DNA of 64,000 bases from Macrostomum lignano (lineage: Eukaryota), in NCBI GenBank assembly GCA_002269645.1, contig NIVC01000928.1, positions 186,001 to 250,000 of the forward strand. Reading direction: 5' to 3'. Position numbers and translations under genes: made by a program. Below are positions 12,966-46,382 of the stretch, piece by piece. Numbering within the stretch: the first letter of the stretch is position 1; every line of letters starts with the position of its first letter. The notes under the pieces are model-generated. The model made no database searches. It saw nothing but the letters and a program-made list of their open reading frames with translations, and had not been told where the DNA came from.

Positions 12966-14115
12966 TTACTCCACTAAAATTTCTAAATGTTTAAAACCTG
13001 GTCCTTCTTGCGTTTTTTAAATTCACCGAGCATTTCTTTAATAAATACATGTAAACTAAAAAGCTCAACTTCAATTTCCAAGTGTTGTTGGGGTCATGGG
13101 GGTCGTGATCCCCTCCAGACTAGAGGCCGGATGACTTGGAAGTTTAAAATCATCTAGTAGGGGCACTGAAGCTATACATAATAAAAGTGCACATTTCAGT
13201 GCCCCTTTACATTGATCTTGGCCTTTTAATTTTAAAATGCATTATGGACGACCTGTCACTTGTTACTTGTTATGCAACCAGTCCACTGCGCTTTCTTGCC
13301 ATAGATCTTATATTCCCTAGATAGGCCACTTAGCTTAGGGACATAGACGCTATTTTTTGAGAATTTAATAGACCTTCTCGTGAATTATATCAAAAGCTAC
13401 TCAATCAAACTAAGAATGACGCGTGCACTGCAGATACTACTGACGAAATTGAGTTCAAGTAGTTAATTTTCGCGCTGTCGCGAGTTGCAAAATTTTTCAC
13501 AGTGGCTTCTATGGCCACATAAAGTGGTTAATGAGTGGCCTATCTTGTGTATATATGATCATTGTAATTATACTTTTACCCAGACGCAATGAAACAATAT
13601 TTTGGCCATTATTCCACAGTTTTGATGTGTACCATAGACATTTGGATTGAAAAAATCCATCGCTCAGTATTTTTGTTAATAAATACATAACAGCAAGGAG
13701 TAAATGATCAAAAAGGAAAAAATCATTAAAACTAAAGTACCAGCTACACGAAGAGTTCATAATAAATGTCACAGCTAGAGCAGGTCATCAGTTTGTAGTC
13801 GAAATTTGACAATGTAAAAATCAATTTGTCACCCAAAGTGAAACATGCAGTTCTCAAAGCCGCAGTTTCCAAAGATGCTCGACACTTTAGCCTGATGATT
13901 TGGCACTGCAAAAGGAGTTTAACTATTTTGAATGTTTTCTATAAAAGAGAAATACAGGTGCTCAAGTATAGTTGCCGAACTTACCATTTGAAAGATGCAC
14001 GTCTTGGTTGGCTTGCGACTGATGAGCTTCGTCTGATGAGCTTCTTTGGTACCGCAGTATCCAAGCTGGGATTCTTTGGGACTGTCGGTTGCTCGACTGA
14101 ATCGATTGGCCGCTT

Positions 14116-14363
14116 TCAGGCATCGTTTATAGCCGTCGAGGCGTTGAAGACTGCATGGTCGCGTTTTCTTCCTAGGTAGCGCCGCACGGTTCGTTCAGTC
14201 GTCGACAGGAAGATTTTTCCAATTAATAAGCGCGGCTGTTTGACGAGATGCACTATAGCCATAGTTGTTTGACAAGACAAATAGCTTTTTCTCCCACTAC
14301 TCGCTTTCCTGATTTCTTGCAAGACTCAAGCAAAATCAGCACTCATCACAGTGTTGTCTATGG
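14116..14363 (-). mobile_element. Degenerate Crypton-like tyrosine-recombinase remnant 2
   Basis: GTTGTCTATGG site 95 bp from an ATG (14262). Broken frames give INWKNLPVDD and ERTVRRYL, paralogous to remnant 1. Confidence 0.5.
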
Positions 14364-14640
14364 TCAATCTAAGCCACACAACTCAGTCGTCTATGGGTAA
14401 AACAACTCTTAAAACAGCCAATTGAAGCATGATAAAAAGTGTAAAATAATGACAGCGACAAAAGTGTGGAATAATGGCCGCAAAATTGTAGAATAATGAC
14501 TGGGCGCTGAGTGAAAGTATGAATACAATGGACACCTATTTTTAGAACAAAACAGCAAACACCAACAACAAAAGATTAGCGCTATGGAAAGTTAATTGTG
14601 CAGTATCAATATGGCGCAATTGTCATAGTGCCGAAGACCA

Positions 14641-15222
14641 TTACAGATTGCAATTGTTGAAAGTGCAGTTGTTCATAATAAAGATATTCCGACCGTTCAT
14701 CTGACGACCATCAGACACGCTCACTGCTTCTTGCACGATGGAACTTTGGATGCTGATGTCAGCAGGCATTGTTACTTGACCGTGGGTCGCGGCGCTTTGT
14801 CCCATGTTCAACGCACGCGACACTGCATCGCTGCATTGTTGCAGGGACTTGTCCCGTTTAACTGCCACTGCCAGGTAGCGCCGGACCGTGCTCTCGGACT
14901 TTTGACCCGTGATAGCCATGATCTCGCTCATCGAATGCCCAGCCGATTCCAGGTCTCAAGAAAGTGCAAGAAGTTCAAAAAGTCTTCGTTATCCTTCATG
15001 TCCTTCTGAGATGTGGAAAGTCTTGAGATCCAATTGAGTTCGCTGCTAGATACGTTGGCTAAACTTTCGACAGGCAGATTGCCCCAGTTGATCGGATATG
15101 ACGTCTGGTTCTCCATGGCCAAGCGAATGTAGCTATTTACGTTTTATTCTCTCTTTCTCTCCACATCTCCTTCCTTTCCACCCTCTTAACCCCCAGCCTG
15201 TTTGCAACTTCGTTGTCTATGG
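14641..15222 (-). mobile_element. Internally deleted Crypton-like tyrosine-recombinase remnant 1
   Basis: ATG 15116: MENQTSYPINWGNLPVES..RLGI, frameshift near 14930, then MSEIMAITGQKSESTVRRYL (YR box II, usually ITGH..S...Y) and a C-terminal NNCTFNNC typical of Crypton/DUF3504 proteins. GTTGTCTATGG site 100 bp upstream of the ATG. Confidence 0.65.
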
Positions 15223-15688
15223 CCCAAAATCCAGTAAACCACCTCAGTCTTTATGTCTCTCTCTCCTCGGTAACCCCTCTCTCCTTTCGATGCCCTTTTT
15301 GTCTATGGCCCCACTGAAATTCGACAATGCGGTTATTCGTAAGTGAGACTCATGAGCGCACTCATGAGCATAGGACTATTATCCTAAAGTCTCACTTACG
15401 AATAACCAACCATTATCCCGAGTTTGAAATCATTATCCTGAAGTTTAAGTGAAAAAATAAATAAAAGTGCTCATGGTTTAACTATAGACGATTGCATTAT
15501 CCTAAAGGCTGATTTTTGACAATGCACTTGTATAGTATGCAACTGAGTTGAATAATGGCCAAAACTCGAGTGCGCGTAGCTACGCCAAAACTCGAGTGCG
15601 CGTAGCGCACGAGTGTCTATGGCCATTATTCAACTCAGTTGCACACTATACAATCTACCATTGTCTTGTGCCAACTCTAACCAAAAGT

Positions 15689-15890
15689 GCGCGCTTATGC
15701 AAGTGCGACTTCATGACACTGCGCGCTTATGCAAGTACGACTTCATGACACAGCGCGCTTATGCAAGTACGACTTCATGACACTGCGCGCTTATGCAAGT
15801 GCGACTTCATGACACTGCGCGCTTATGCAAGTGCGAGCTCGTGACACTGCGCGCTTATGCAAGTACGACTTCATGACACTGCGCGCTTAT
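15689..15890. repeat. 32-bp tandem repeat (GCGCGCTTATGCAAGTACGACTTCATGACACT), ~6 copies
   Basis: Units start at 15689, 15721, 15753 and so on. Confidence 0.95.
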
Positions 15891-15973
15891 CCAAGGTTAA
15901 TCTTTGTGAAACGGAGGACTAGTGGACTTGTGGACTATAATATTCGAGGCGAACCCCGCTTCGAGTAGTTAAG

Positions 15974-16215
15974 CCATAGATTCTATATTCTCTATATAGA
16001 TGGCCATACTGAGCGAATACTGTGCAAAGTCGTAGAATCCAACGCAGCAATGAAAAACATCCGCGACATCAAAAACTTTTCATGTCTGATTTCGCTTATT
16101 CAACTTTAAGCCCAAAGACAGCTGTGCAGAAAATAACGTCTGTGTCCCAAAAAACTACTGAAAAGTAATTCCTTCGCGTCGTAGTCGCCTTCTAGAGAAT
16201 ATATAGGATCTATGG
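15974..16215. mobile_element. 242-bp MITE-like element with imperfect TIRs beginning CCATAGAT
   Basis: Left end CCATAGATTCTATATTCTCTA; reverse complement of right end CCATAGATCCTATATATTCTCTA. A similar end occurs at 13299 (CCATAGATCTTATATTCCCTA). Confidence 0.75.
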
Positions 16216-17179
16216 GTTGAACCGCCTGGAAATACATTACCGTGGAAAAAGATGCGAAAGTACAACAAGCAGAAATTTATTCTATTTTAATAGGTTGGAG
16301 TTTTAAATATTGTTGTCTTTATATATTTATGACGAGTAATACGAGTCGTACTTTGGAAGTTTTAATGCAATAATAAACAGGTAGTTTCATCATAGTGAAT
16401 TTATATAGTAAACATAAATCGGTAAATGTATTTTTGGTCGTTGAAATACATAAAAATGTATGATTTGTACTTTTGAGTATGATTATACTGCGTACTTAGT
16501 TGCTACGTAAATGGGTACACGTATCCTGCTAAAAGCTGATCCCTTTAGCCGAAGTACAAGCCATTACCTTTTTAGCTGAATTACTTTATTAACTAAATTA
16601 ATAAATTTGTGATTTACGACGTGATAAAATATTATTATAAGTACTTGTCGTAAGACACACGCGCAGAATTTTGAAACTCCAAGAAAGTAAAAATGAGTAT
16701 CGTTTTATCCTACGCAACTTCGACTCATAGAGACAACTGAGCTGGATACCGGCAGTAAGGAACGCATGTCTCGTATTTTGTCGTCTTTAGAGAATGGCAT
16801 AGTGCTGAATTGGGTTTCGCCATAGACAAGTTTGATTCAATCAAGGACCACTCAAGTAGGACCGGAAACTACGTTTCTTGGAACGCTTTAGGCGGCAGTT
16901 TTTGCCGCAGTTTTTACCCTTTTTGTTACACCAGTCATTAAACAAAGAATGATAAAATTATTAACGTAGAAATGTAGTTTCCAGTCCTTCTACTTAAGTA
17001 GTCCTTGGTTTGGTCGAGAAAAATCTGCGCTAGAAGAATCCAATTGCCTGAGAGCATAGAAATTTATGAGAGCCTAATATACGTAACATTCCTAACGACC
17101 CCAGCTCATTTCTAAGAACATCCTGTGTGACGTGACGTCCTTCTACTTCAGTTTTCCATGCTTCAGCCATGCTGCGATG

Positions 17180-19565
17180 TTAATCTTTGTTGTCCTCTTT
17201 GTCCTTAATTGGCAGCAGCGAATTTGCAGCGGCTTCGGCCAGCGGCTTCATCAAATACGAGTCTAAGTCTAACTTTGGCAAATGGGTAAAAAAACTCGCA
17301 TTTCGGGTCACAAGCGAAACCAGCAGGGGCAGTCCTCGGATGCTCCACTTCAGTCCGAGACGAAGAACCGTTCGCAGGATCTGATTGGATGCGCCCTTCG
17401 GGATGCTCACCAGCTCTAGTAGTTCAGTTCGCAGGTCTTGAACAATGTCTACCGCCATGCCGACTCTTTTCTTGCCGGATCCCAGCTTACCGATCCCATT
17501 GAGAATCGCATCCAAAATTGGGCTTTCCAATGCGTCCTTCATTTTCTTTTTGAAGCTGTCGACTTGGCGCGAGAGATCGAGTCCGGACTTTGCCCAGATG
17601 CAGAAGTGCTCACAGTTGCACTGCCCAACGTGGTACGCGGTCTCTTTCTCGCGTCCGAAAGCTCGTTTGAGCACAACCTTTGGACTGAAGCAGTCGAGGC
17701 TGTGGTATTGAACCAGTCGGCCATCCTTCTCGACATCTGCAAAGGGGTACAGAGTCTTTTGAATCGTACCCTTCGCCGCAAAAGCCAAGGCAGCCGATGC
17801 TGTCCTTGCGTCAATCTCGCCAGTGTACTCAATCAATGCCACCTGTTGTGTGTCCTCTAAAACCTCCACAACAATCGCATGGTGACAGTAGAATCTTCGC
17901 TTAAAATCCAAGTGATCTCCGGGCTTCAGATCTGCGGCACTTTTCAATTTAGCAATCTGAAAAGGCAGCCCCATCTCGCTGCTGGAATGACGGGGCAGAG
18001 CGCGTCTGAGTTCGGGTACAGTTTTTGGAATTCTCGAGTCCCGGCAATTGTCCAAGCAGATGGGGCTGGATTTGCCGCAGGCGCACTCAAGCAAATTATT
18101 GCCACTGTCACCCTCAACAGGATGCAGGTGCGACAAGCCGCAACAATGCGATTCCAGCTCCTCGAAGCCGTCGGGTACCTCTGCGGGAGCTGGCGTCTGC
18201 GCGGGCTCGATGTCGCAAATCGACTCACAATTGCCGCATGCGCTGCAGTGCTGCACTAGCCACGTGCTTCCTTCCCGGTCTTCGAACCCGATTTCTGCTG
18301 CGGGTTTGCCACAACGCTCACAGTCGGTTTGCTTTACGTGGTCGTTGTTCAACTGTCGCTGAACTTCGTGCTTAGCATTGGAGCAGAGCTCGTCGATTCG
18401 ACGTTTCGACATTTTTCCGTCACAGTTGTGGCAAAGAACGACTTCTTCGCCAGCAGAGATTTCGTCCGTCTCGACTCGACCGCTTTCGCACTTGGGACAA
18501 TGCTCTCCGGAGATTTCGAATTGGAAAATGTACCTTGAATACGGTAGCTGACAGTCTGGGCAGTAGAAGGACACCATCAGTGAGTCTGCCTTATCTAGGT
18601 CGAACAGTAGCGGCTCGTTGTTTTGGCATGAACAACCAACGAAACGCCACAACTCCTCCGAATAATTCATCGAGCACGGAGGCTGGGGAATGGAGAGGTA
18701 GGTATAAGGTAGACTTGAACCAGTTGTACCTCTTCATCGAATCTTGAGTGAATGTAACCTCGACCCTCCACTATCACAATCACGCAGTAAAACTTAGTCT
18801 CACCTGTTCTGTGCTCGGCTCTGAAGCTTTTTTACTCAAAGAAACCTCTGCTATCTCTCCGTTTAGCTCTTCAAAGTGGTCCGCTTCTTGACCGCACTTC
18901 GGGCAACTCGCCAACTCATCCGTGGGTTTGTACTTGTTGTTGCACCGTCTGCAGCAGGCGATCAGACACGGGTCTCTGACGGGGGCGTCTTTCTGTTAAT
19001 TTAATAAGGTGCAATTGTTATCACCGAAAAAGGGCAGGTTTTCTTGATTAAATACGCTCGTAAGACACTAAGACAGCGCATCTCTTACGGTTCCTGGCGA
19101 CGAAACGCTGCGATGAAGCGCTGGGGCCTCCGGTTGAGCGAGCTTGCAATCTTCTTTCGTATGCAAACTGTTTGGCAAGCTTGGTGAGTCAGTCTGTCAG
19201 GGGGTTTATGTGCGTTGTGATTAATATTTTCCTTGTAAACTATAACGAAAATTTTGCTAAAGAATGAACTCTTCTACCGAAAGGTCTTCTAAATGGTTTC
19301 TGAACCATCTCCTAACAGAGTCACTCACCGAGGCGGCACTCAAGCAGTACTTGCACAAAATGTTTGTATTATCCGGCACGGCATCAACACTAGAGCTTTC
19401 ACACTTTGGACAGCACAGTGAGTCTTCGACTGCGAATTCCCTGTCAAAGAGTTCGTCACAGTCTCCGCAGTAGATCGAGCCGCACTTGCTGATGTCTCGC
19501 TCGCAGCTCTCGCATCTGTTGAGTCCGGCTTCGGCCATGTCACACAGAGATCTGAGAGGATTCAT
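17180..19565 (-). CDS. Multi zinc-ribbon (CxxC) + LRAT/PLAAT (permuted NlpC/P60) domain protein, ~694 aa; exons 19565-19278, 19193-19089, 18992-18804, 18682-17180
   Basis: H-box FYCHHAIVV and catalytic NCEHF motif. Many CxxC pairs. Three phase-0 GT-AG introns (84, 96, 121 bp) join ORFs 19257-19574 and 17180-18670 in frame. Confidence 0.88.
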
Positions 19566-20029
19566 TTTGATCAAAAAACAAAAGCAGTTATTTAAAAACT
19601 ACTTGCAGTAGGAAGGAATAATCTAAAAAAACGTTTTCACAACACTAAAATGCTTAAGGATTCGATTACCCCTTATCTTGTCTCTGCGCCATGGCATAGA
19701 GACCTTAGAGACGTCTCAAAGTCGTAGCATTTTACAAACCCGCTGCGATTATCTATGGCAGACTTCAAAAGTAAAAAACTCGTATGCACATAAGTATCTA
19801 GTTAATGTTTCTACAACTTGTAGATTTTGAAAGTAAAGCTTAGAACTGCTAAATAATGCTTAGTATCAGTTACTTTTTTCAATTCGCAAAATAAGGAGTT
19901 TTGGCCATAGATATTTTTTTAGATTTCGTTCTTTCTTTCTTTGTCTAGAGTGCTGGGGTGCAAATGTGGGGGCTACCTCAGCGCCCCCTTGACCCCGCTT
20001 TCTTTTGACTTTGCCATAGAAATTTTACC

Positions 20030-20325
20030 GGCCGTGAAACCGACTGAATGCATTGGAGTAAATGGGATTTTACCATAGACAGAATCAGCGGGCCGTGAAA
20101 CCAACTGAATGCATTGGAGTAAATGGGATTTTACCATAGACAGTCTCAGCGGGCCGTGAAACCAACTGAATGCATTGGAGTAAATGGGATTTTACCATAG
20201 ACGGAATCAGCGGGCCGTGAAACCAACTGAAAGCATTGGAGTAAATGGGATTTTACCATAGACAGTCTCAGCGGGCCGTGAAACCAACTGAATGCATTGG
20301 AGTAAATGGGATTTTACCATAGACA
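20030..20325. repeat. 61-bp tandem repeat, ~5 copies, each carrying CCATAGAC
   Basis: Cores at 20073, 20134, 20195, 20256, 20317. Confidence 0.95.
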
Positions 20326-21589
20326 CGACCGCTAACTATAACACTAATATGGATGGGCCGCATCGGGCAGAAACGAGCCAACATTCCTCGGCGCTACGCG
20401 GCTCGGCGTTATAGCTCATTTCTGCCCTCTGCAGCCCATCAATATTGGTATAATATAGAATCTGAGGTCTTGAACGTGCTCTACTTGTGTAGGTGTGAAA
20501 TTGGAAAAATATCATTGCCACATTAGCATAGAAATGGGTAATGCTTTCTCTAGCTTCCAATCCACCTGTGCTATTTCCATAAGTCATTCGTAAAGTGAAC
20601 CGAACAAAGAGGCTTCCCTGACAGGAGGATTTGGAAATTTGGGGATTATGAACAGGCCTTTTTTCTGATATAGCAATCACAGACTCACAGTCAGGCATTA
20701 AAGACACTTACAAAAGCAAAAATGGAAAAACTAGAAAAAACTTACGCTATTCTTATCAGCGTTGGTACAAAAAACGCAGACCTCTTTGGTTGTCTGCTTT
20801 CTTCAGGCTCTTCAATTTCTTTGAGGGTTTACACTAGTACACCGCAGTACGGACGGTACATGGAACTAAACCCAGGCCGTCTCCATTTGGTTCTTAAATA
20901 CAATCTCTGCTATTACGAGCGTACGGCTATTCCCAAAAAGGTCGAGACGCGTACGCCGTACAGTGCTTCTGCGTGAGCACAGGGTGCGTACAATCAACAT
21001 TGATTGAGATAGTTCCCTTTTGTTTGAGTGTATAATTGTTTTCAGTTTTGTGAACAAATGTACATTTGCACAAACGAGCGTACTTTCCATGCGCACGACA
21101 GCTTGCGGTTGGCTGCTTTCAAGGTCAAGGTCAGACAGACCAGAAGGGGGGAGGGTGGATCCCGAGGTGAAGACCCGAAATTGACACCTCGCCCCCCTGG
21201 TTGCACCACTGAGATAGACAGAACTTTTCGTATTCTGTCCCCTCTTCAAATTATTATTGAAGAAATCCTAGAGTTTTTTATTTCGAATTTTCGCGTTTTT
21301 TGGCGTTTGATGTTTCACGTTTTTTTAAATGTTGTGTCGTGTCCACTGTCCAGTTTGTTATTCATGAAATGTTTTACATCTATTGCAAAAAACAAGTGAC
21401 AAAGACCGATTTAGCAGAGTTGGCATTCCGAACGGAAAAGCGGGGGCTGATTTCTTTGTTTCTGTTTGGCTCTGCGACTGTATTGATCAAGATAATCTTT
21501 GCAACTTTCCATCTTAACTTCTCAGTCTCACCCTCTAATGAGAGAGGAATCTCACCTAAATCCTTGTTGACTTTGGCGCCTCACGATTT

Positions 21590-41533: not shown

Positions 41534-44500
41534 ATGTGGCTCACAACCCTGATCTTCTACCTGTTCATTCTCATCGGCGGGGCGCACCTGCTTCGGAAGA
41601 ACTTGCGCAATCGCCAGACAGCAAAGCTGAAGCACTGCGGCTTCTATTCAATCGGAGGAGAGTTCTTCAGCCTGAAGAAGTGGCTCATGTACTGCCTGCT
41701 CTGGTTGGGGGTTGGCGTCAGAGGCAAAAGCCGATTCGAGTCTGGGACCGCGAGCTCCTGCAGCAATGGGAAGAGTCCGAGAAACCGCAGCAGCTTGACC
41801 AGAACGACAAGGATGTAAGTTGACGATAGACATCCGCCCATTCTGTCGCGAATGGCAGGATGTCATGGTGACGACATGACGCGCTTTTTAATTTTGTGTG
41901 GGTGCCTGGCAAGCCTCTTAAGGGTGTCACCGCCAGTCAGCACGTTTCAGTACCTAAAAAACTGGGCCCAATTCCAGAGGTTCCATTACGAGACAATCTC
42001 TAGATTTTGTTCACCCTTTGTTCAATCTATCGTACAGGTATAAGCAAATGGTACTTGGTATATAATCGTAATTCCTCTAATGCTATCAAGTAAGGTCTAA
42101 GTAAGGTCTGCCAACTACATTCGCGTATCATTTTTGGCATGTGGCATGTGGTTTTAACACAAAGCAAAAACTGGTTCCAGTTGCAACTAGTCCAAAGACC
42201 CACCTTATTCTACTAATTAGTTCTTTTTAATCGGCGAAATCTCATCAAGCAGCTCGCGTAGTCTAAGCAAAGCAGTTCATAAACCCGATATCTTGGTATA
42301 GTTCTTGTCATTCGAGTAATTTCTTTGTTCCCCCAGTCCATCGATTCTGTCTATTTCTACGGAGGCGAGCTGGAATCGGACAAGCCGGCCATAGTTATCC
42401 GAATGGCCAGGCGGCCCGACCGAGTGGCCGAGCTCTGGTTTCTGGTGCGCATGCCGGACGGTACCATCCTGGAGCACCCGGTGCAGCCCAATACTCACGT
42501 GACCAACTGCAGTCCGGACACCTTCTCCGCCGGCGGATTTACTATTACTTGCGACGAGCCGATGAACTACTGGAGCCTGCGCTACCACGGCCTGATGAAG
42601 CGCGGCATCGCCGACCAGCTGGAGCCGCAGGCCACGTCGCACAACCTGGATGACTACGTGACTGTCAATCTGCGCGCAAAATTCCGCGCCTCCGTCAATC
42701 CGTTCGACGCTAAGACGGATCTCAGTCCGAAAATCGTGGCCGAGTTTCTCGCCCGCGAGCCCTGGAGCTCTGCATTCTTTGCCAAGCTGAAGCGAAACGA
42801 GGAACAAGTCCACCTGGAGCAGTGGGGAATGCTGACTGGAGAGATGACAGTTGGAACTCAGCGCTACGATCTCAATATGAGCGCTTATAGGGACCACTCC
42901 TACGGTATGGCTCAATTAAGAATTTGATTTAAAATTAATGAGTAACTTACGAGCGTATATACGACAGTTCGTGTATGCCAATTTTGTTGCAGGACTGCGC
43001 AATTGGCGTCAATACTATCGCTACGCGGCCCACTTTGGCTACCTGGAGAATGGGAGCTTCTTCAGCTTCGGCTCGGTGTCGATTCCACAGACGACAACGC
43101 ACGTGAAGTACGGCTATATCTACCTGCCCTACGGCAAGAAGTGCGCCATCGATGGCCACGACTTGAACCTGTGGGAGAAAGGTGAAATAACGGAGCCGCC
43201 GAAGAACTACCAGGTGCGACTGATTGCCAACGGCAAGGACTACAAAGTTGAGGTTCGGGCCGGTGAGAACATCCCGCTGTACGTGCAATCGGCCAGTTGC
43301 GTTCTATTCGAAAGGTTCACCGAATTCACCGTGAATGGCATTCGCGGATGGGGCATAACGGAGTACTGCTACTGGCATCACAGTCCTCTGGAAGGTACAC
43401 CGGAGGGTTCCTTGCCAATGCCTATTGTTCCGGGTGCTCTGAGCAATGAAGACACCCTTGTCGTTGACTTGGACCAACAAGACTGCTGTGTGAGGTCTCT
43501 GACTGGCGGCAAAGGGTCGCAGCTGGCTGTGGCTACTAAAATCTTTAATGAGAGCGGCAGAAGCGACGTCCGAGTGCCGAAGGGGTTCGTAGTGACCACT
43601 AATGCGTACCGAGAGTTTATCCAAGCCAACACCGTGTTGTGGGAGGGCATTAACGAGCTGCGAGCGGCTGCCACCTCCGGAAAGGGCGGGTCTCTGGAAC
43701 CTGCTTGTAAATCCTTGATCAAAGCTTTCGCCTCGGCGACTCTGCCAGCCTCTGTGACCGAGGTAGTGATGAATTCATTGGATCGGATTTTTAGCGGCGA
43801 ATCCGAAATTCGGTTCGCTGTGCGCTCGTCCGGCGTTAGCGAGGATGGCTCCAGCGCGTCCAGCGCAGGTCAGATGGAGACGTTCCTGGGCGTGAATCGG
43901 GACGAGCTGCCGGTAAAAATTGTTGAGTGCTGGGCGTCGCTTTTTTGCCATCGGGCCGTGCAGTACAGGCACAGCGTAGGCCAGGGCATCGATGCCAGCA
44001 TGGCGGTGGTGGTGCAGGGGATGGTCCCAGCCACAGCGGCTGGAGTTCTCTTCAGCCAGGATCCGATAAGCGGCTGCTCGAGCCTGATGAAGATTGAAGC
44101 GAACTTCGGCCTCGGCGAGAGTGTCGTGTCCGGCTTAGTGACGCCTGACTCGTTCACCGTTCGACGATTTCCGGACGGCTACAAGACCATTGAGGATCGC
44201 CAGCTGGGCGAGAAGTCCGAAGTCATGCAGGTGGGCGAGTCAGGCGGCCTGGAGACCAGGCACAGTGATGAGAAGGTCAGCTCCCTGAGCGACAAGCGAG
44301 TGCTGGCTCTGGCAGAGCTTGGCGAGGAGCTCGAGAAACGCTACGGAGCTGCCGTCGACGTTGAATTTGCACTGGTCGACGACACAATCCACCTGCTCCA
44401 GGTGCGCCCTGTTACTGCGATGGGACCAGAGACTTTGGATGATGTGATGCACGAGTTCGACAGCTCGTTCAGCTACAAGGAGGGCTGGCTGACAACGGCC

Positions 44501-46382
44501 AACATTGGCGAAATGAGTCCCGGTGCGATGACACCGCTGACTCTGAGCACGTTTGGCCGAGCGGTTGACTGGAGCATGATAAAGTACAAGGCGACCAAGT
44601 CTGGCATTGTCCCAGAGATCAGCAGGCCGATGTCTGGCTTAGCCTGCAGCGCCAATCACCTGCTAATAAACATGATGGAGCTGGGCCTGGGCTCCGAGGT
44701 CATGTCGCTGTTCGGCAAGTTCGACATGGCCTGCATCGCGCTGCTCGGTCGGACGCTGGACGAACCAACTCGCGACGATCTACGACGCTACACGGACGGT
44801 GAGGCGAACCTGCTAGACAAGATTTGGAACGCCGTCTGTGACATTCTGACCATCTACCAGTCGACCAAGCTCACAGAGGCCTGGGAAAAGAAGTTCCAAG
44901 ACGGCTACCACGTGATGCCGCAGTACACAGCTAAGGAGCAGTACATGGAGCTGGACTCTCGCATGCCGGACTATGCTCAGTGCTGGTGCGACACCATCAT
45001 CAACACGGGCAAGTCCGCCGTCAACAGCATGGTGCTGGTGAGCATCTTCAACGAGCAATTCGGCTTGAATGAGCAGACGTTCAGCAAGCTGGCTCTGTGC
45101 CTGTCCAACTGCGAAAACGTCTACAGTGCCGATGTGCCGACCGCTCTGCACAACCTGGCCGTCGATCTGTCGAACTCTCCGAACTGCAGCGCCTTCCTGG
45201 CTTTGTCGCCAAAGGATGCCGCCAACTGGCTTCTGTCGTACGAAAGCGGCAAGGCCGGTGAGAGCTTTCGCAGCTTCATCAACCGGCATGGCTTCCGCTG
45301 CATCCGGGAGGCCGAGTTCCGTGAGGTGTCCTGGCGAGCCGCTCCAGAAAAAATCGTGGCCATAATGCAGGCCACCATTTCGGCTGGCCTGGTGCGGCGC
45401 GAGGCCAAGGAGACGCTGACTATTGATGAGATCGTGGAGCAGTTGGAGCTGCGCAACCCACTGACGAGGCGACTCGTCAAGGCGCTGATTCCGTTGGCCA
45501 GACGCGGTGTCGCAAGCCGCGAATGGGGTAAGGCCATCTCCATTCGAATGGTGGACGCCATCAAGGAGGGTTACAAGCACCTCGGCCAGCTAATGGTTAA
45601 AGAAGAGTTGGCGCCGGACACCGACTTGGTGTACTTCTTCACTCACCGGGAGCTCGGCCTGCTCGTTGATCGCAAGGACACCTCTTCATTGATCAAGAAG
45701 GTGAGCAAGCAGCTTCTTGAATGTGCACATTAATAGCACGAGAAACACGCAGACTCATTAATTATTGTACCTGGTAGGTTTGAGTAAAAGTCTGAAGTCT
45801 GAGGATAAGTATAATAATCGATACGATTTTTTTAAAGATTAAATACTTAAAAAGTTTTCATGCGTAAGCACAGCCCGCAATTCCGCCATTCCGTCCCTCG
45901 CACAGGCCCTGAAGCGACGCGCTGCTCTGCCGCGCCAGAACGCCCTGCAGCTTCCCGAGCTGATCAAAGGCAACCCCCGGTTCGACCTGCTCGCCGAGCA
46001 GGAGCGGCCGCGATCTCCTCCCGGTGCCAGACGCGGCAGCGGCGAGCAGCTGAGCGTCGCCGGCATGCCGGTGAGCCGCGGCTCGGTGACCGGGCGCGCT
46101 CGGGTCATTCGCAACCTGCAGGACGCGGCCGAAATCGAGAAGGACGACGTGCTGATCGTGCCGTACACCGACGTGGGCTGGACGCCCTACTTCCCACTGA
46201 TCAGCGGCCTCGCCACGGAGAAGGGAGGCCTGCTGTCGCACGGAGCCGTGGTGGCCCGCGAGTTCGGCATCCCCTGCATCGTCGGGGCCAAGCAGGCGAC
46301 CTCGCTGTTCAAGACTGGCGACTTTGTCGATCTGGACGGCGAGCGCGGCCTGCTGAGGCTGGCGGAGCAGCAGCAGGAGTGA
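41534..46382 (+). CDS. PEP-synthase/PPDK-family enzyme (rifampicin phosphotransferase/PigC-like) with an N-terminal extra domain; exons 41534-41814 (apparent frameshift near 41707-41711), 42337-42904, 42993-45700, 45906-46382
   Basis: ATP-grasp motifs GGKGSQL, VPKGFVVTT, AVRSS..EDG..SSAGQMETFLG, IEANFGLGESVVSG, DVEFA, LLQVRPVT. C-terminal swivel phospho-His motif GGLLSHGAVVAREFGIPCIVG. Domain order ATP-grasp, substrate domain, His domain matches RPH-type enzymes. Confidence 0.9.

What the first reader, a model, noticed from the sequence alone, without database searches (positions are those of the whole stretch)
13299..20323. Dense field of CCATAGA/TCTATGG sites: candidate tyrosine-recombinase cassette cluster
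Seen: the 7-mer occurs 19 times in 7 kb (13299, 13508, 13632, 14357, 14390, 15216, 15302, 15616, 15974, 16209, 16820, 19752, 19905, 20014, plus five in a tandem at 20073-20317). Uniform composition predicts under 1, and I noticed only about four in the other 57 kb. The sites bound discrete modules in inverted and direct orientation (13299-13514, 13632-14363, 14390-15222, 15974-16215, 16820-19758), and I saw none inside the LRAT exons. Knowledge: Cryptons are YR-based DNA elements with short terminal repeats and no classical TSD. I recall TATGG-type termini for some Crypton families, which needs verifying. Inference: a YR repeatedly integrates modules at this core, building an integron-like array that includes a host-type gene.
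Basis: partly seen in the sequence, partly recalled or inferred. Interest (0 to 1): 0.85.

Follow-up and report, generated by a model that had tools for sequence, protein, structure and literature searches.

The report
Crypton transposon debris field in flatworm
The dense CCATAGA sites mark the edges of broken copies and tiny derivatives of a tyrosine-recombinase ("Crypton") transposon family of the flatworm Macrostomum lignano; this gives an animal Crypton family a defined boundary motif, but there is no evidence that the neighbouring LRAT gene is a mobile cassette.

Summary
In detail: 19 of the window's 24 CCATAGA/TCTATGG sites lie in 13299-20323. Shuffles give a mean of 8.5 for the whole 64 kb.

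The window is Macrostomum lignano contig NIVC01000928.1.

- X (14397-15214, minus strand) joins the first ~60 residues of the YR to its last ~100. It is 95-97% identical to M. lignano "Tyr recombinase" proteins and is flanked by direct CCATAGAC.
- Y (13640-14355, minus strand) is a stronger deletion, flanked by inverted copies.

Homology between copies stops at the 8-mer. A full-length relative from another sample has the same 8-mer 93 nt before its start codon. The other pieces are non-coding mini-units of 25-306 bp, foldback elements and a 61-bp tandem array, each carrying the motif.

A ~98.5% identical paralogous locus lacks 2099 bp (13566-15664) holding six sites. That indel ends at direct CATTGT repeats, not at CCATAGA.

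An unrelated locus of the same genome has another such cluster.

The Crypton/YR reading is therefore largely right. The LRAT gene as a cassette is unsupported. Whether the motif is the strand-exchange site is inferred, not shown.

The parts
13299..13565 (.). M1: a 267-bp foldback (TIR) non-autonomous element. The left end is CCATAGATCTTATATTCCCTAGATAGGCCACT. The right arm (13534-13560) is its inverted copy, with a degenerate terminus GATCATTGT. It is flanked by CTTG on both sides in the empty allele.
   Evidence: Inverted repeat I4, 27 nt at 85%. Alignment with M2. The flanks read CTTG|...|CTTG in L001. Both of its CCATAGA sites are mutated in L001.
13566..15664 (.). INS: a 2099-bp composite block present in the window and absent from the paralogous locus L001. 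It is bounded by direct CATTGT repeats (13560-13565 and 15659-15664) and holds six CCATAGAC sites.
   Evidence: L001 reads ...TATATATGATCATTGT|CTTGTGCC... across the site.
13566..13631 (+). Z: a 66-nt fragment of a Crypton 3' untranslated end, with one GGCCATTATTCCACA subterminal repeat. It ends at the core at 13632-13639.
   Evidence: It aligns with the 3' end of X from CATTGT up to the core, and similarity stops after the core (inverted repeat I1).
13640..14355 (-). Y: a strongly deleted, decayed Crypton copy. The N-terminal peptide ALINWKNLPVDD (14198-14233) abuts the C-terminal ERTVRRYLGRKRD...INDA (14119-14196). An intron-like stretch follows (13906-13984), then the last exon ..SIFGNCGFENCMFHFG* (13832-13879). 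The 5' core is at 14356-14363 and an inverted core at 13632-13639.
   Evidence: Translations and coordinates. tblastn hits of P0009, P0011, P0012 and P0008 at 14059-14202. The N-terminus and last exon match P0009/L003.
14364..14388 (-). S: a 25-nt unit between two direct cores. It is homologous to the last 27 nt of V (GACTGAG.TG...GATT..), so it is a solo '3' arm'.
   Evidence: Read from the sequence and the alignment of arms.
14397..15214 (-). X: an internally deleted Crypton copy. It has a 98-nt 5' leader, then YR residues 1-~55 (MENQTSYPINWGNLPVESL...NFLHFLE, 14955-15116). These are joined with a frameshift to the YR C-terminus (DLESAGHSMSEIMAITGQKSESTVRRYL...NNCTFNNCNL*, 14644-14955). A 3' UTR follows with three ~22-nt subterminal repeats (14435-14500). 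Direct CCATAGAC cores flank it at 15215-15222 and 14389-14396.
   Evidence: HMMER hits P0004, P0005 and P0006 at 96-100% identity. tblastn: P0016 residues 270-331 match 15131-14946 (95%) and residues 650-691 match 14955-14824 (95%), so about 320 residues are missing. Tandem Repeats Finder row 14435-14500.
15223..15300 (-). V: a 78-nt mini-unit between direct cores. It has a purine-rich 5'-leader-like half and a 3' arm (GACTGAGGTGGTTTACTGGATTTTGGG).
   Evidence: Sequence.
15309..15614 (-). W: a 306-nt non-coding unit between direct cores. It contains hairpins (15331-15407; 15528-15653) and GGCCATTATTCAAC repeats.
   Evidence: Inverted repeats I3 and I7 and direct repeats D8 and D13. No protein homology.
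15974..16215 (.). M2: a 242-bp foldback element with ~27-nt inverted ends, CCATAGATYCTATATWCTCTA... It is related to M1 only in the ends.
   Evidence: (D10, I14). Present in L001 as well.
16216..16819 (.). U: a 604-bp AT-rich segment. Both of its ends carry arm-plus-core facing outward (core 16209-16215 on the minus strand, core 16820-16826 on the plus strand).
   Evidence: D3 family: 16797-16828 resembles the 61-bp unit.
16820..19758 (.). The segment bracketed by inverted cores that holds the LRAT-domain gene (CDS 17180-19538, minus strand, three exons). It is best read as host DNA between two core-bearing blocks and is listed only because the finding names it.
   Evidence: Pfam LRAT 7.3e-12. 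Matches BOX15_Mlig018064g1/g2. Same arrangement in L001.
19759..20013 (.). E: a 255-bp unit with inverted arm-plus-core ends facing outward (TCTATGGCAGACTTCAAA / TTTTGACTTTGCCATAGA). It has an extra core at 19905.
   Evidence: Inverted repeat I20 and site list.
20030..20325 (+). A 61-bp tandem array of 4.9 copies. Each unit is a core plus 53 nt that include a 3'-arm-like AACTGAATGC...GGGATTTTA. L001 has one unit fewer.
   Evidence: Tandem Repeats Finder, D2/D3, site positions in L001 and L002.

Best explanation
The region is a local pile-up of dead and miniature derivatives of a CryptonA-like DNA transposon family of Macrostomum lignano. These elements encode only a tyrosine recombinase.

Anatomy (shown). 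The 8-mer CCATAGAC, which contains the TATGG known from CryptonS termini, sits at the junctions of the units. On its T-rich side lies an element's 3' end, with an RCTGAR motif and further in three GGCCATT... subterminal repeats. On its A-rich side a 5' leader begins, about 95-120 nt before the recombinase start codon.

Mechanism (inferred). The recombinase recognises this junction. A circular copy carrying one core recombines with a core, or with a core-like site, already in the genome. Each resident copy then offers new targets, so insertions accumulate at one place and give head-to-tail runs: core-W-core-V-core-X-core-S-core-Y on the minus strand. Recombination between inverted cores flips the DNA between them. 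This would explain inverted pairs, foldback units (M1, M2, U, E) and a leader that abuts an inverted core, as in L004. Recombination between direct cores, or ordinary slippage, changes unit number, as in the 61-bp array.

The 2099-bp block absent from the paralogous locus is either a composite that went in or out by recombination at a variant core (CATTGT/ACAATG), or a microhomology deletion.

Shown: the enrichment, the Crypton identity of X and Y, homology ending at the core, the same core next to a distant full-length relative, the indel, and a second cluster elsewhere. Inferred: that the 8-mer is the recombination site, and that self-targeting built the cluster.
For: 1. Enrichment: 19 of 24 sites in 7 kb.
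2. Organism and locus: M. lignano NIVC01000928.1.
3. A HMMER search of 1.84 billion representative proteins with window:14644-14955(-) finds M. lignano proteins at 96-100% identity, plus the full-length relative P0009. UniRef names P0005, P0012, P0013, P0014 and P0015 'Tyr recombinase domain-containing protein' of M. lignano.
4. P0009, P0005 and P0012 match CryptonA recombinases from the Kojima & Jurka 2011 supplement best. CryA2_SP scores 71 bits at 29% identity over 172 residues. There is no hit to the DIRS1 recombinase and only an insignificant one to XerD (E 0.34). The motifs ERG, NH[CS]IRV and RRY are conserved. Pfam Phage_integrase is below threshold (1.6e-5). The top PDB hit of the family profile is XerA, not significant (E 0.075), and it aligns over the HxxR...Y region.
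5. tblastn maps the N- and C-terminal parts of the recombinase next to each other in X and in Y, which is the pattern of deletion derivatives.
6. X lies between direct CCATAGAC copies. The Z and X 3' ends align up to the core and not beyond it. X and Y resemble each other at the 5' end only from the core onward.
7. L004, a full-length relative from another sample whose C-terminal ORF is about 39-45% identical to X's, has two GTCTATGG sites. One ends 93 nt before the ATG, and 13 nt are identical to window 13630-13642.
8. GGCCATT subterminal repeats occur in the 3' regions of X, L004 and L006.
9. The empty site in L001 has a single CATTGT.
10. The unrelated locus L008 has 13 sites against 2.8 expected, 12 of them in 4.3 kb, including a 26-bp array that carries the core.
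Against: - No intact recombinase gene is in the window, and no full-length M. lignano copy with both ends could be fetched. The termini of an autonomous element are therefore not directly defined.
- About half of the neighbouring core pairs are inverted. In L004 the core is antisense to the gene, whereas in X and Y it is sense. Simple circle integration with an asymmetric crossover predicts direct repeats only.
- The one presence/absence polymorphism ends at CATTGT, not at CCATAGAC.
- Kojima & Jurka 2011 found no terminal repeats in animal Cryptons.
- M1 has a 4-bp flanking repeat (CTTG) that could be a target-site duplication made by a DDE transposase.
- The conserved 'H' before the catalytic tyrosine is Q in most members of this family (ITGQKS).
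- Self-targeting rests on two loci, and M. lignano is generally very rich in repeats.
Confidence: 0.65

Rival explanations
1. The CCATAGA-ended units are ordinary terminal-inverted-repeat MITEs moved by a DDE transposase encoded elsewhere. They nested here by chance or by insertion preference, and the Crypton fragments are passengers or neighbours.
For: M1 and M2 have 27-30-nt inverted ends that start with CCATAGAT. M1 is flanked by CTTG on both sides in the empty allele. Many site pairs are inverted. CCATAGA differs by one base from the piggyBac end CCCTAGA, which I recall from memory and did not test.
Against: M2, Y, U, E and the LRAT segment have no target-site duplication, and no TTAA flanks occur. 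Three independent recombinase-bearing copies (X, Y, L004) have the 8-mer 93-119 nt before the recombinase start, although their leaders are otherwise unrelated. X is bounded by direct copies, not inverted ones. No transposase-like ORF turned up in the module translations.
Confidence: 0.15
2. The field arose mainly by local duplication, slippage and rearrangement of one or two ancestral Crypton insertions, with no site-specific re-insertion. The core is simply inherited with each duplicated piece, and the 2099-bp difference is a microhomology (CATTGT) deletion in the other paralog.
For: The genome is extremely rich in minisatellites (73 Tandem Repeats Finder rows). Five of the 19 sites come from a 61-bp array whose copy number differs between the paralogs. 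The left edge of INS cuts inside a sequence that is internal to the 3' UTR of X, which fits a deletion or truncation point rather than a natural element end.
Against: The units are not similar to each other outside the core and its short arms (self-BLAST). X and Y derive from recombinase genes whose remnants best match different relatives: X is 95-97% identical to P0005 and P0016, while Y is about 59% identical to P0009. They are therefore separate insertions. M1's CTTG flanks are adjacent only in the allele that lacks INS, which favours insertion.
Confidence: 0.15
3. TTTnRG-CCATAGAC-A is a host protein-binding site (promoter, insulator or small-RNA-cluster element) kept by selection around genes such as LRAT.
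For: Inverted sites lie about 215 nt upstream of the LRAT start codon and 354 nt downstream of its stop codon. The motif extends beyond 7 nt. Eight of ten shared sites are identical in the paralog.
Against: Two of ten shared sites are mutated at about 1.5-4% overall divergence, which is what neutrality predicts. A homologous site is degenerate in L009. The sites coincide with transposon ends, tandem arrays and an indel. No RNA family or tRNA was detected in the region.
Confidence: 0.05

Closest known systems
CryptonA elements of animals (Kojima & Jurka 2011, Mob DNA 2:12, PMC3212892)
   Same: They encode a single tyrosine-recombinase protein, and this group gives the best sequence matches (CryA2_SP, CryA1_SP, CryA1_OL). 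The motifs RG.E, NH.(I/L)R and (H/Q)..S......Y are shared. No extra C-terminal DNA-binding domain was detected. Internally deleted non-autonomous derivatives outnumber autonomous copies, as that paper reports for medaka and Rhodnius.
   Different: The paper found no terminal repeats in animal Cryptons. Here a conserved 8-mer with short conserved arms marks the junctions. There are mini-units of 25-86 bp and foldback derivatives, and the copies cluster. The residue before the catalytic tyrosine motif is Q, not H, in most members.
CryptonS elements of oomycetes and diatoms
   Same: They have 5-6-bp terminal direct repeats, mostly TATGG. The flatworm core (G)TCTATGG contains TATGG, and X is flanked by direct copies of it.
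   Different: The recombinases are only distantly related. The CryptonS fragment tested was a partial core of 84 residues and gave no significant BLAST match. Whether the shared pentamer reflects common descent or chance is unknown. CryptonS elements are not reported as arrays or with inverted cores.
Integrons and other site-specific integration hot spots such as tandem prophage or ICE integration at one att site
   Same: Repeated recombinase-mediated insertion at one short core would give head-to-tail units separated by the core, as in core-W-core-V-core-X-core-S-core-Y.
   Different: There is no resident integrase gene next to the array, no attI/attC distinction and no promoter-driven gene cassettes. 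The units are transposon debris and the orientations are mixed.
DIRS and Ngaro retrotransposons, which also use a tyrosine recombinase
   Same: They use a tyrosine recombinase, and DIRS1-type elements have inverted terminal repeats.
   Different: The 1.8-2.0-kb full-length relatives L003 and L004 contain no reverse transcriptase or RNase H. There is no BLAST match to the DIRS1 recombinase.

Membership tests
Crypton (CryptonA group) | Encodes a tyrosine recombinase with the catalytic R...HxxR...Y residues | tested here: met
   The family members P0009, P0016(275-690), P0013 and the L004 product keep ERG, NH[CS]IRV and RRY. Pfam Phage_integrase is sub-threshold, and the PDB profile's top hit is XerA, not significant (E 0.075), aligning over HxxR..Y. 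In the window itself only the C-terminal (tyrosine) part and the N-terminus survive, in X and Y.
Crypton (CryptonA group) | Recombinase sequence groups with published CryptonA recombinases rather than with DIRS, CryptonI or prokaryotic ones | tested here: met
   BLASTP against sequences copied from Additional file 4 of PMC3212892. The CryptonA entries score 42-71 bits. CryI1_TC, DIRS1 and XerD give no hit or an insignificant one. The reference panel was small and no tree was built.
Crypton (CryptonA group) | The recombinase is the only enzyme of the element, with no reverse transcriptase and no DDE transposase | tested here: met
   The contigs L003 (1770 bp) and L004 (1963 bp) hold only the recombinase gene with one intron. 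Pfam finds nothing else. The contigs may not reach both element ends.
Crypton (general) | [quoted passage not shown] | tested here: inconclusive
   X, V, W and S lie between direct CCATAGAC copies. Y, M1, M2, U and E lie between inverted copies. INS is flanked by direct CATTGT with one copy in the empty allele.
Crypton (general) | Moves through an excised circular intermediate by site-specific recombination | not testable with these tools
   This needs junction reads, PCR or a recombination assay.
Integron-like cassette array | A resident integrase gene with an adjacent primary attachment site, and cassettes that carry genes | tested here: not met
   No intact recombinase gene is in the 64-kb window: tblastn finds only the X and Y remnants. 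The units have no protein homologues. The LRAT gene shows no sign of mobility.
piggyBac-type MITE (considered because CCATAGA resembles CCCTAGA) | TTAA target-site duplication directly flanking the ends | tested here: not met
   None of the 25 non-redundant sites is directly flanked by TTAA. The flank consensus is TTTnRG, with G at position -1.
DDE-type TIR MITE (general) | Terminal inverted repeats plus a target-site duplication of fixed length | tested here: inconclusive
   M1 has inverted ends and CTTG on both sides. M2 has inverted ends but no duplication. Copies elsewhere could not be examined.

The most novel reading that the evidence does not exclude
This flatworm Crypton family has a true att-like core, CCATAGAC, sharing TATGG with stramenopile CryptonS. 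The recombinase uses the core for integration, excision and inversion. The elements therefore target each other and build arrays of full, deleted and 25-86-bp 'mini-Crypton' units. Host segments caught between two cores, such as the LRAT gene between the inverted cores at 16820 and 19752, then become invertible or mobilisable. That would be the first defined recombination site, and the first integron-like behaviour, for an animal Crypton.
Probability: 0.25. Interest if true: 0.7.

Novelty: new member of a known kind. Interest (0 to 1): 0.5.

Why it matters
Cryptons are the least understood class of eukaryotic DNA transposons. Their ends are hard to find, animal Cryptons were reported to lack terminal repeats, and no recombination site has been defined experimentally. 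This family offers several handles for study:
- a conserved 8-mer junction with short arms;
- several near-identical recombinase genes (five proteins in one 90%-identity cluster);
- deletion derivatives down to a few tens of bases;
- a precise filled/empty pair of sites;
- a host animal, M. lignano, that can be made transgenic.

Together these make the mechanism directly testable. For genome annotation, the result explains one class of unclassified repeats in M. lignano. It also explains gene models that have swallowed Crypton exons (P0004, P0006).

Tried and rejected
- Word-indexed protein searches with the recombinase-like fragment and with a chimera of all module ORFs found nothing. Only the exhaustive HMMER search worked.
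- Pfam on the window fragments gave no recombinase hit.
- Rfam and tRNA scans were empty. This rules out a small-RNA gene as a target, as in Dada-type elements.
- Self-BLAST showed that the modules are not copies of each other.
- The piggyBac idea (CCCTAGA ends with TTAA flanks) was rejected on the flank composition.
- A Helitron reading (TC...CTRR, inserted after A) was rejected because most sites are preceded by G.
- A resemblance to 5S rRNA (GGCCATAC) got no support from Rfam.
- Attempts to fetch other M. lignano copies of X failed. P0004, P0005, P0006 and P0012 are not on record. The loci of the NACHT-gene paralogs P0017 and P0019 contain no X copy. They did reveal a second core cluster.
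- The L008 and L009 comparison gave no clean core-bounded indel, only a degenerate core, a hAT-like MITE insertion and array-length changes.
- No paper in the library treats Cryptons in Macrostomum.

Full report
**1. Observation**

CCATAGA/TCTATGG occurs 24 times in the window, 19 of them in 13299-20323 at exactly the positions listed. Dinucleotide-preserving shuffles of the whole 64 kb give a mean of 8.5 and at most 17. Five sites come from a 61-bp tandem array at 20030-20325. Counting that array once still leaves 15 sites where about 0.94 are expected (P about 1e-13). It is the most over-represented 7-mer of the region.

Oriented the same way, the sites share a longer pattern, TTTnRG|CCATAGAC|Aa. 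A second motif, GAATAATGGCC, occurs four times here and nowhere else in the window.

**2. Where the window comes from**

The 496-residue ORF at 17180-18670 (minus strand) has an LRAT domain. It matches the Macrostomum lignano protein BOX15_Mlig018064g1.

Its sister copy g2 lies on contig NIVC01000928.1 of assembly GCA_002269645.1. Locus L002 from that contig is 100% identical to window 7180-29538. The g1 copy lies on NIVC01000393.1 (locus L001). L001 is collinear and about 98.5% identical, so it is an allelic or recently duplicated locus.

**3. A filled/empty pair**

L001 lacks window 13566-15664 (2099 bp, called INS here). It reads ...TATATATGATCATTGT|CTTGTGCC... across the site. In the window, INS lies between direct CATTGT copies at 13560-13565 and 15659-15664. 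INS contains six of the sites: 13632+, 14357-, 14390-, 15216-, 15302- and 15616-.

It also ends at CATTGT, not at CCATAGA.

All other large blocks are present in both loci: M1, M2, the LRAT gene and the right-hand sites. The 32-bp and 61-bp arrays differ in copy number between the loci.

**4. What the modules are**

On the minus strand, 14644-14955 reads DLESAGHSMSEIMAITGQKSESTVRRYL.... The word-indexed protein searches found nothing.

An exhaustive HMMER search of 1.84 billion representative proteins found nine hits. Three are 96-100% identical (P0004, P0005, P0006), and one is a full-length 456-residue relative (P0009). UniRef names P0005, its cluster mates P0013-P0015, and P0012 'Tyr recombinase domain-containing protein' of M. 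lignano.

P0009, P0005 and P0012 match the CryptonA recombinases of Kojima & Jurka 2011 best. CryA2_SP scores 71 bits at 29% identity over 172 residues spanning the catalytic core. There is no hit to DIRS1 and only an insignificant one to XerD (E 0.34). The motifs ERG, NH[CS]IRV and RRY are conserved across the family. Pfam Phage_integrase is just below threshold. The top PDB hit of the family profile is the tyrosine recombinase XerA, not significant (E 0.075), and it aligns over HxxR...Y.

tblastn then shows what X and Y are.

- **X (14397-15214, minus strand).** P0016 residues 270-331 match window 15131-14946 at 95%. Residues 650-691 match 14955-14824 at 95%. About 320 residues (roughly 960 bp) of the recombinase are missing between ...NFLHFLE and DLESAGHS....
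- **Y (13640-14355, minus strand).** ALINWKNLPVDD (14198-14233) directly abuts ERTVRRYLGRKRD... (14119-14196). An intron-like stretch follows, then the last exon ...SIFGNCGFENCMFHFG*. This mirrors the gene structure of P0009 in contig L003.

Both are internally deleted, non-autonomous Crypton copies. Their remnants best match different relatives, so they come from two different subfamilies.

**5. The 8-mer is at the unit boundaries**

X starts with CCATAGAC (15222-15215 on the minus strand), 98 nt before its start codon. It ends ...GTTGTTTTAC|CCATAGAC at 14396-14389. Y starts with CCATAGAC (14363-14356), about 119 nt before the position of its lost start codon. X and Y share only the core plus AAC at their 5' ends.

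At the 3' end, the 66-nt fragment Z (13566-13631, plus strand) aligns with the 3' UTR of X. The alignment includes a GGCCATTATTCCACA repeat, runs up to the core and stops there.

Read on the minus strand, INS is: 3' arm - core - W (306 nt) - core - V (78) - core - X (818) - core - S (25) - core - Y (716) - inverted core - inverted Z. V looks like a leader fragment joined to a 3' arm. S resembles the last 27 nt of V. The 61-bp tandem unit is a core plus 53 nt that carry a similar arm (RCTGAR...TTTTR).

M1 (13299-13565) and M2 (15974-16215) are foldback units. Their 27-30-nt inverted ends begin with the core.

**6. Evidence from outside the window**

- L004 is a 1963-bp Logan contig from another sample. 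It encodes a full-length relative whose C-terminal ORF is about 39-45% identical to X's. It has GTCTATGG at 60-67 and at 150-157. The second site ends 93 nt before the ATG. Thirteen nucleotides, TACCATAGACATT, are identical to window 13630-13642. About 0.06 chance matches of the 8-mer are expected in such a contig.
- L004, L006 (a metagenome contig) and X all have three GGCCATT... repeats in their 3' regions.
- An unrelated M. lignano locus was fetched for another reason (L008, NIVC01001957.1). It has 13 sites against 2.8 expected, and 12 of them lie in 4.3 kb. They show the same extended context, include a 26-bp array that carries the core, and come with no recombinase coding sequence.
- Its paralog L009 has fewer sites, and one of them is degenerate.

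**7. Interpretation**

The field is Crypton debris, and the 8-mer marks Crypton unit junctions. I infer that the 8-mer is, or lies within, the recombinase's site. I also infer that resident cores attract further insertions, which would give the head-to-tail runs.

Recombination between inverted cores would flip the intervening DNA without destroying either core. That would account for the inverted pairs and the foldback units. It would also account for L004, where the leader abuts a core in the opposite orientation at the same distance.

These steps are not shown. The mixed orientations are a real difficulty for a simple integration model.

INS may be a composite that moved through a variant core. 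M1's right end and the INS ends read ACAATG. The 3' arm of L006 is followed by AGCAATGAC where M. lignano has CCATAGAC. In favour of insertion, M1's CTTG flanks are adjacent only in the empty allele. Alternatively, INS may mark a 6-bp microhomology deletion. In favour of that, its left edge lies inside what is internal UTR sequence in X. I cannot decide between the two.

**8. The LRAT gene**

The inverted cores at 16820 and 19752 bracket the gene. On both sides, however, the arm-like T-rich sequences lie outside the gene segment. The gene is spliced. The search found only its two near-identical M. lignano copies, and both copies have the same surroundings. Nothing indicates that it is a cassette. 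It could in principle be inverted if the cores are active.

**9. Comparison with what is known**

The family is a member of the CryptonA group by sequence and by gene content. Kojima & Jurka found no terminal repeats in animal Cryptons, whereas CryptonS elements mostly share TATGG termini. The flatworm core contains TATGG.

I found no paper on Cryptons in Macrostomum in the library.

I file this as a new member of a known kind with unusually clear junctions. The integron-like, self-targeting reading is the more novel possibility that remains open.

**10. Limits**

No eukaryotic genome collection could be searched by DNA. The copy-boundary evidence therefore rests on comparisons within the window, one paralogous locus, two short contigs from other samples and one further genomic locus. 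E-values refer to a panel of 11 sequences.

Noticed in passing
window 16843-17010; L008 about 15985-16135: A multi-copy MITE of about 170 bp with inverted ends CCAAGGACTACTTAAGTAG... lies in the 3' flank of the LRAT gene and again in the unrelated locus L008. It is unrelated to the CCATAGA core (I6, 65, 67).
   Followed up: partly
window 15688-15895: A 32-bp minisatellite (TGCGCGCTTATGCAAGTRCGACTTCATGACAC) has 6.5 copies here but only about 1.5 in the paralogous locus L001, right next to the INS site.
   Followed up: partly
whole window: The minisatellite load is extreme: 73 Tandem Repeats Finder rows and dozens of arrays with 10-66-bp units, many 0.3-1.5 kb long. They create long spurious ORFs on both strands.
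   Followed up: no
window 17180-19538 (minus strand): The LRAT-domain protein (668 residues, three exons) has a long N-terminal half full of CxxC pairs, like zinc ribbons. The word-indexed search found only the two M. lignano copies at E <= 0.001.
   Followed up: partly
window 42938-45733 (plus strand): An uninterrupted 931-residue ORF has a pyruvate phosphate dikinase / PEP-utilising N-terminal domain (PPDK_N, 2e-70). This is an intron-less reading frame in an animal genome.
   Followed up: no
proteins P0004/P0020 and P0006 (M. lignano UniRef gene models): Gene models for a NACHT-WD40 protein and a polycystin-like channel include 45-80 residues that are 96-98% identical to the C-terminus of the Crypton recombinase. 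Crypton copies appear to have been annotated, or perhaps used, as exons.
   Followed up: partly
L009 about 19372-19525: A hairpin MITE of about 155 bp (ends AGGAGTTCTATAATTAGCATC) is inserted in L009 but not in its paralog L008. It is flanked by GCTGAAA on both sides, which looks like a hAT-type 7-8-bp duplication.
   Followed up: no
L008 19717-19853: A 26-bp minisatellite in which every unit carries the core (CCATAGAYAATGTATGTATGTCTCGG). The paralog L009 has only two or three units.
   Followed up: partly
window 20337-20455: A 42-nt inverted repeat (81% complementary, 35-nt loop) lies directly after the 61-bp array. Its nature is unknown (I2).
   Followed up: no
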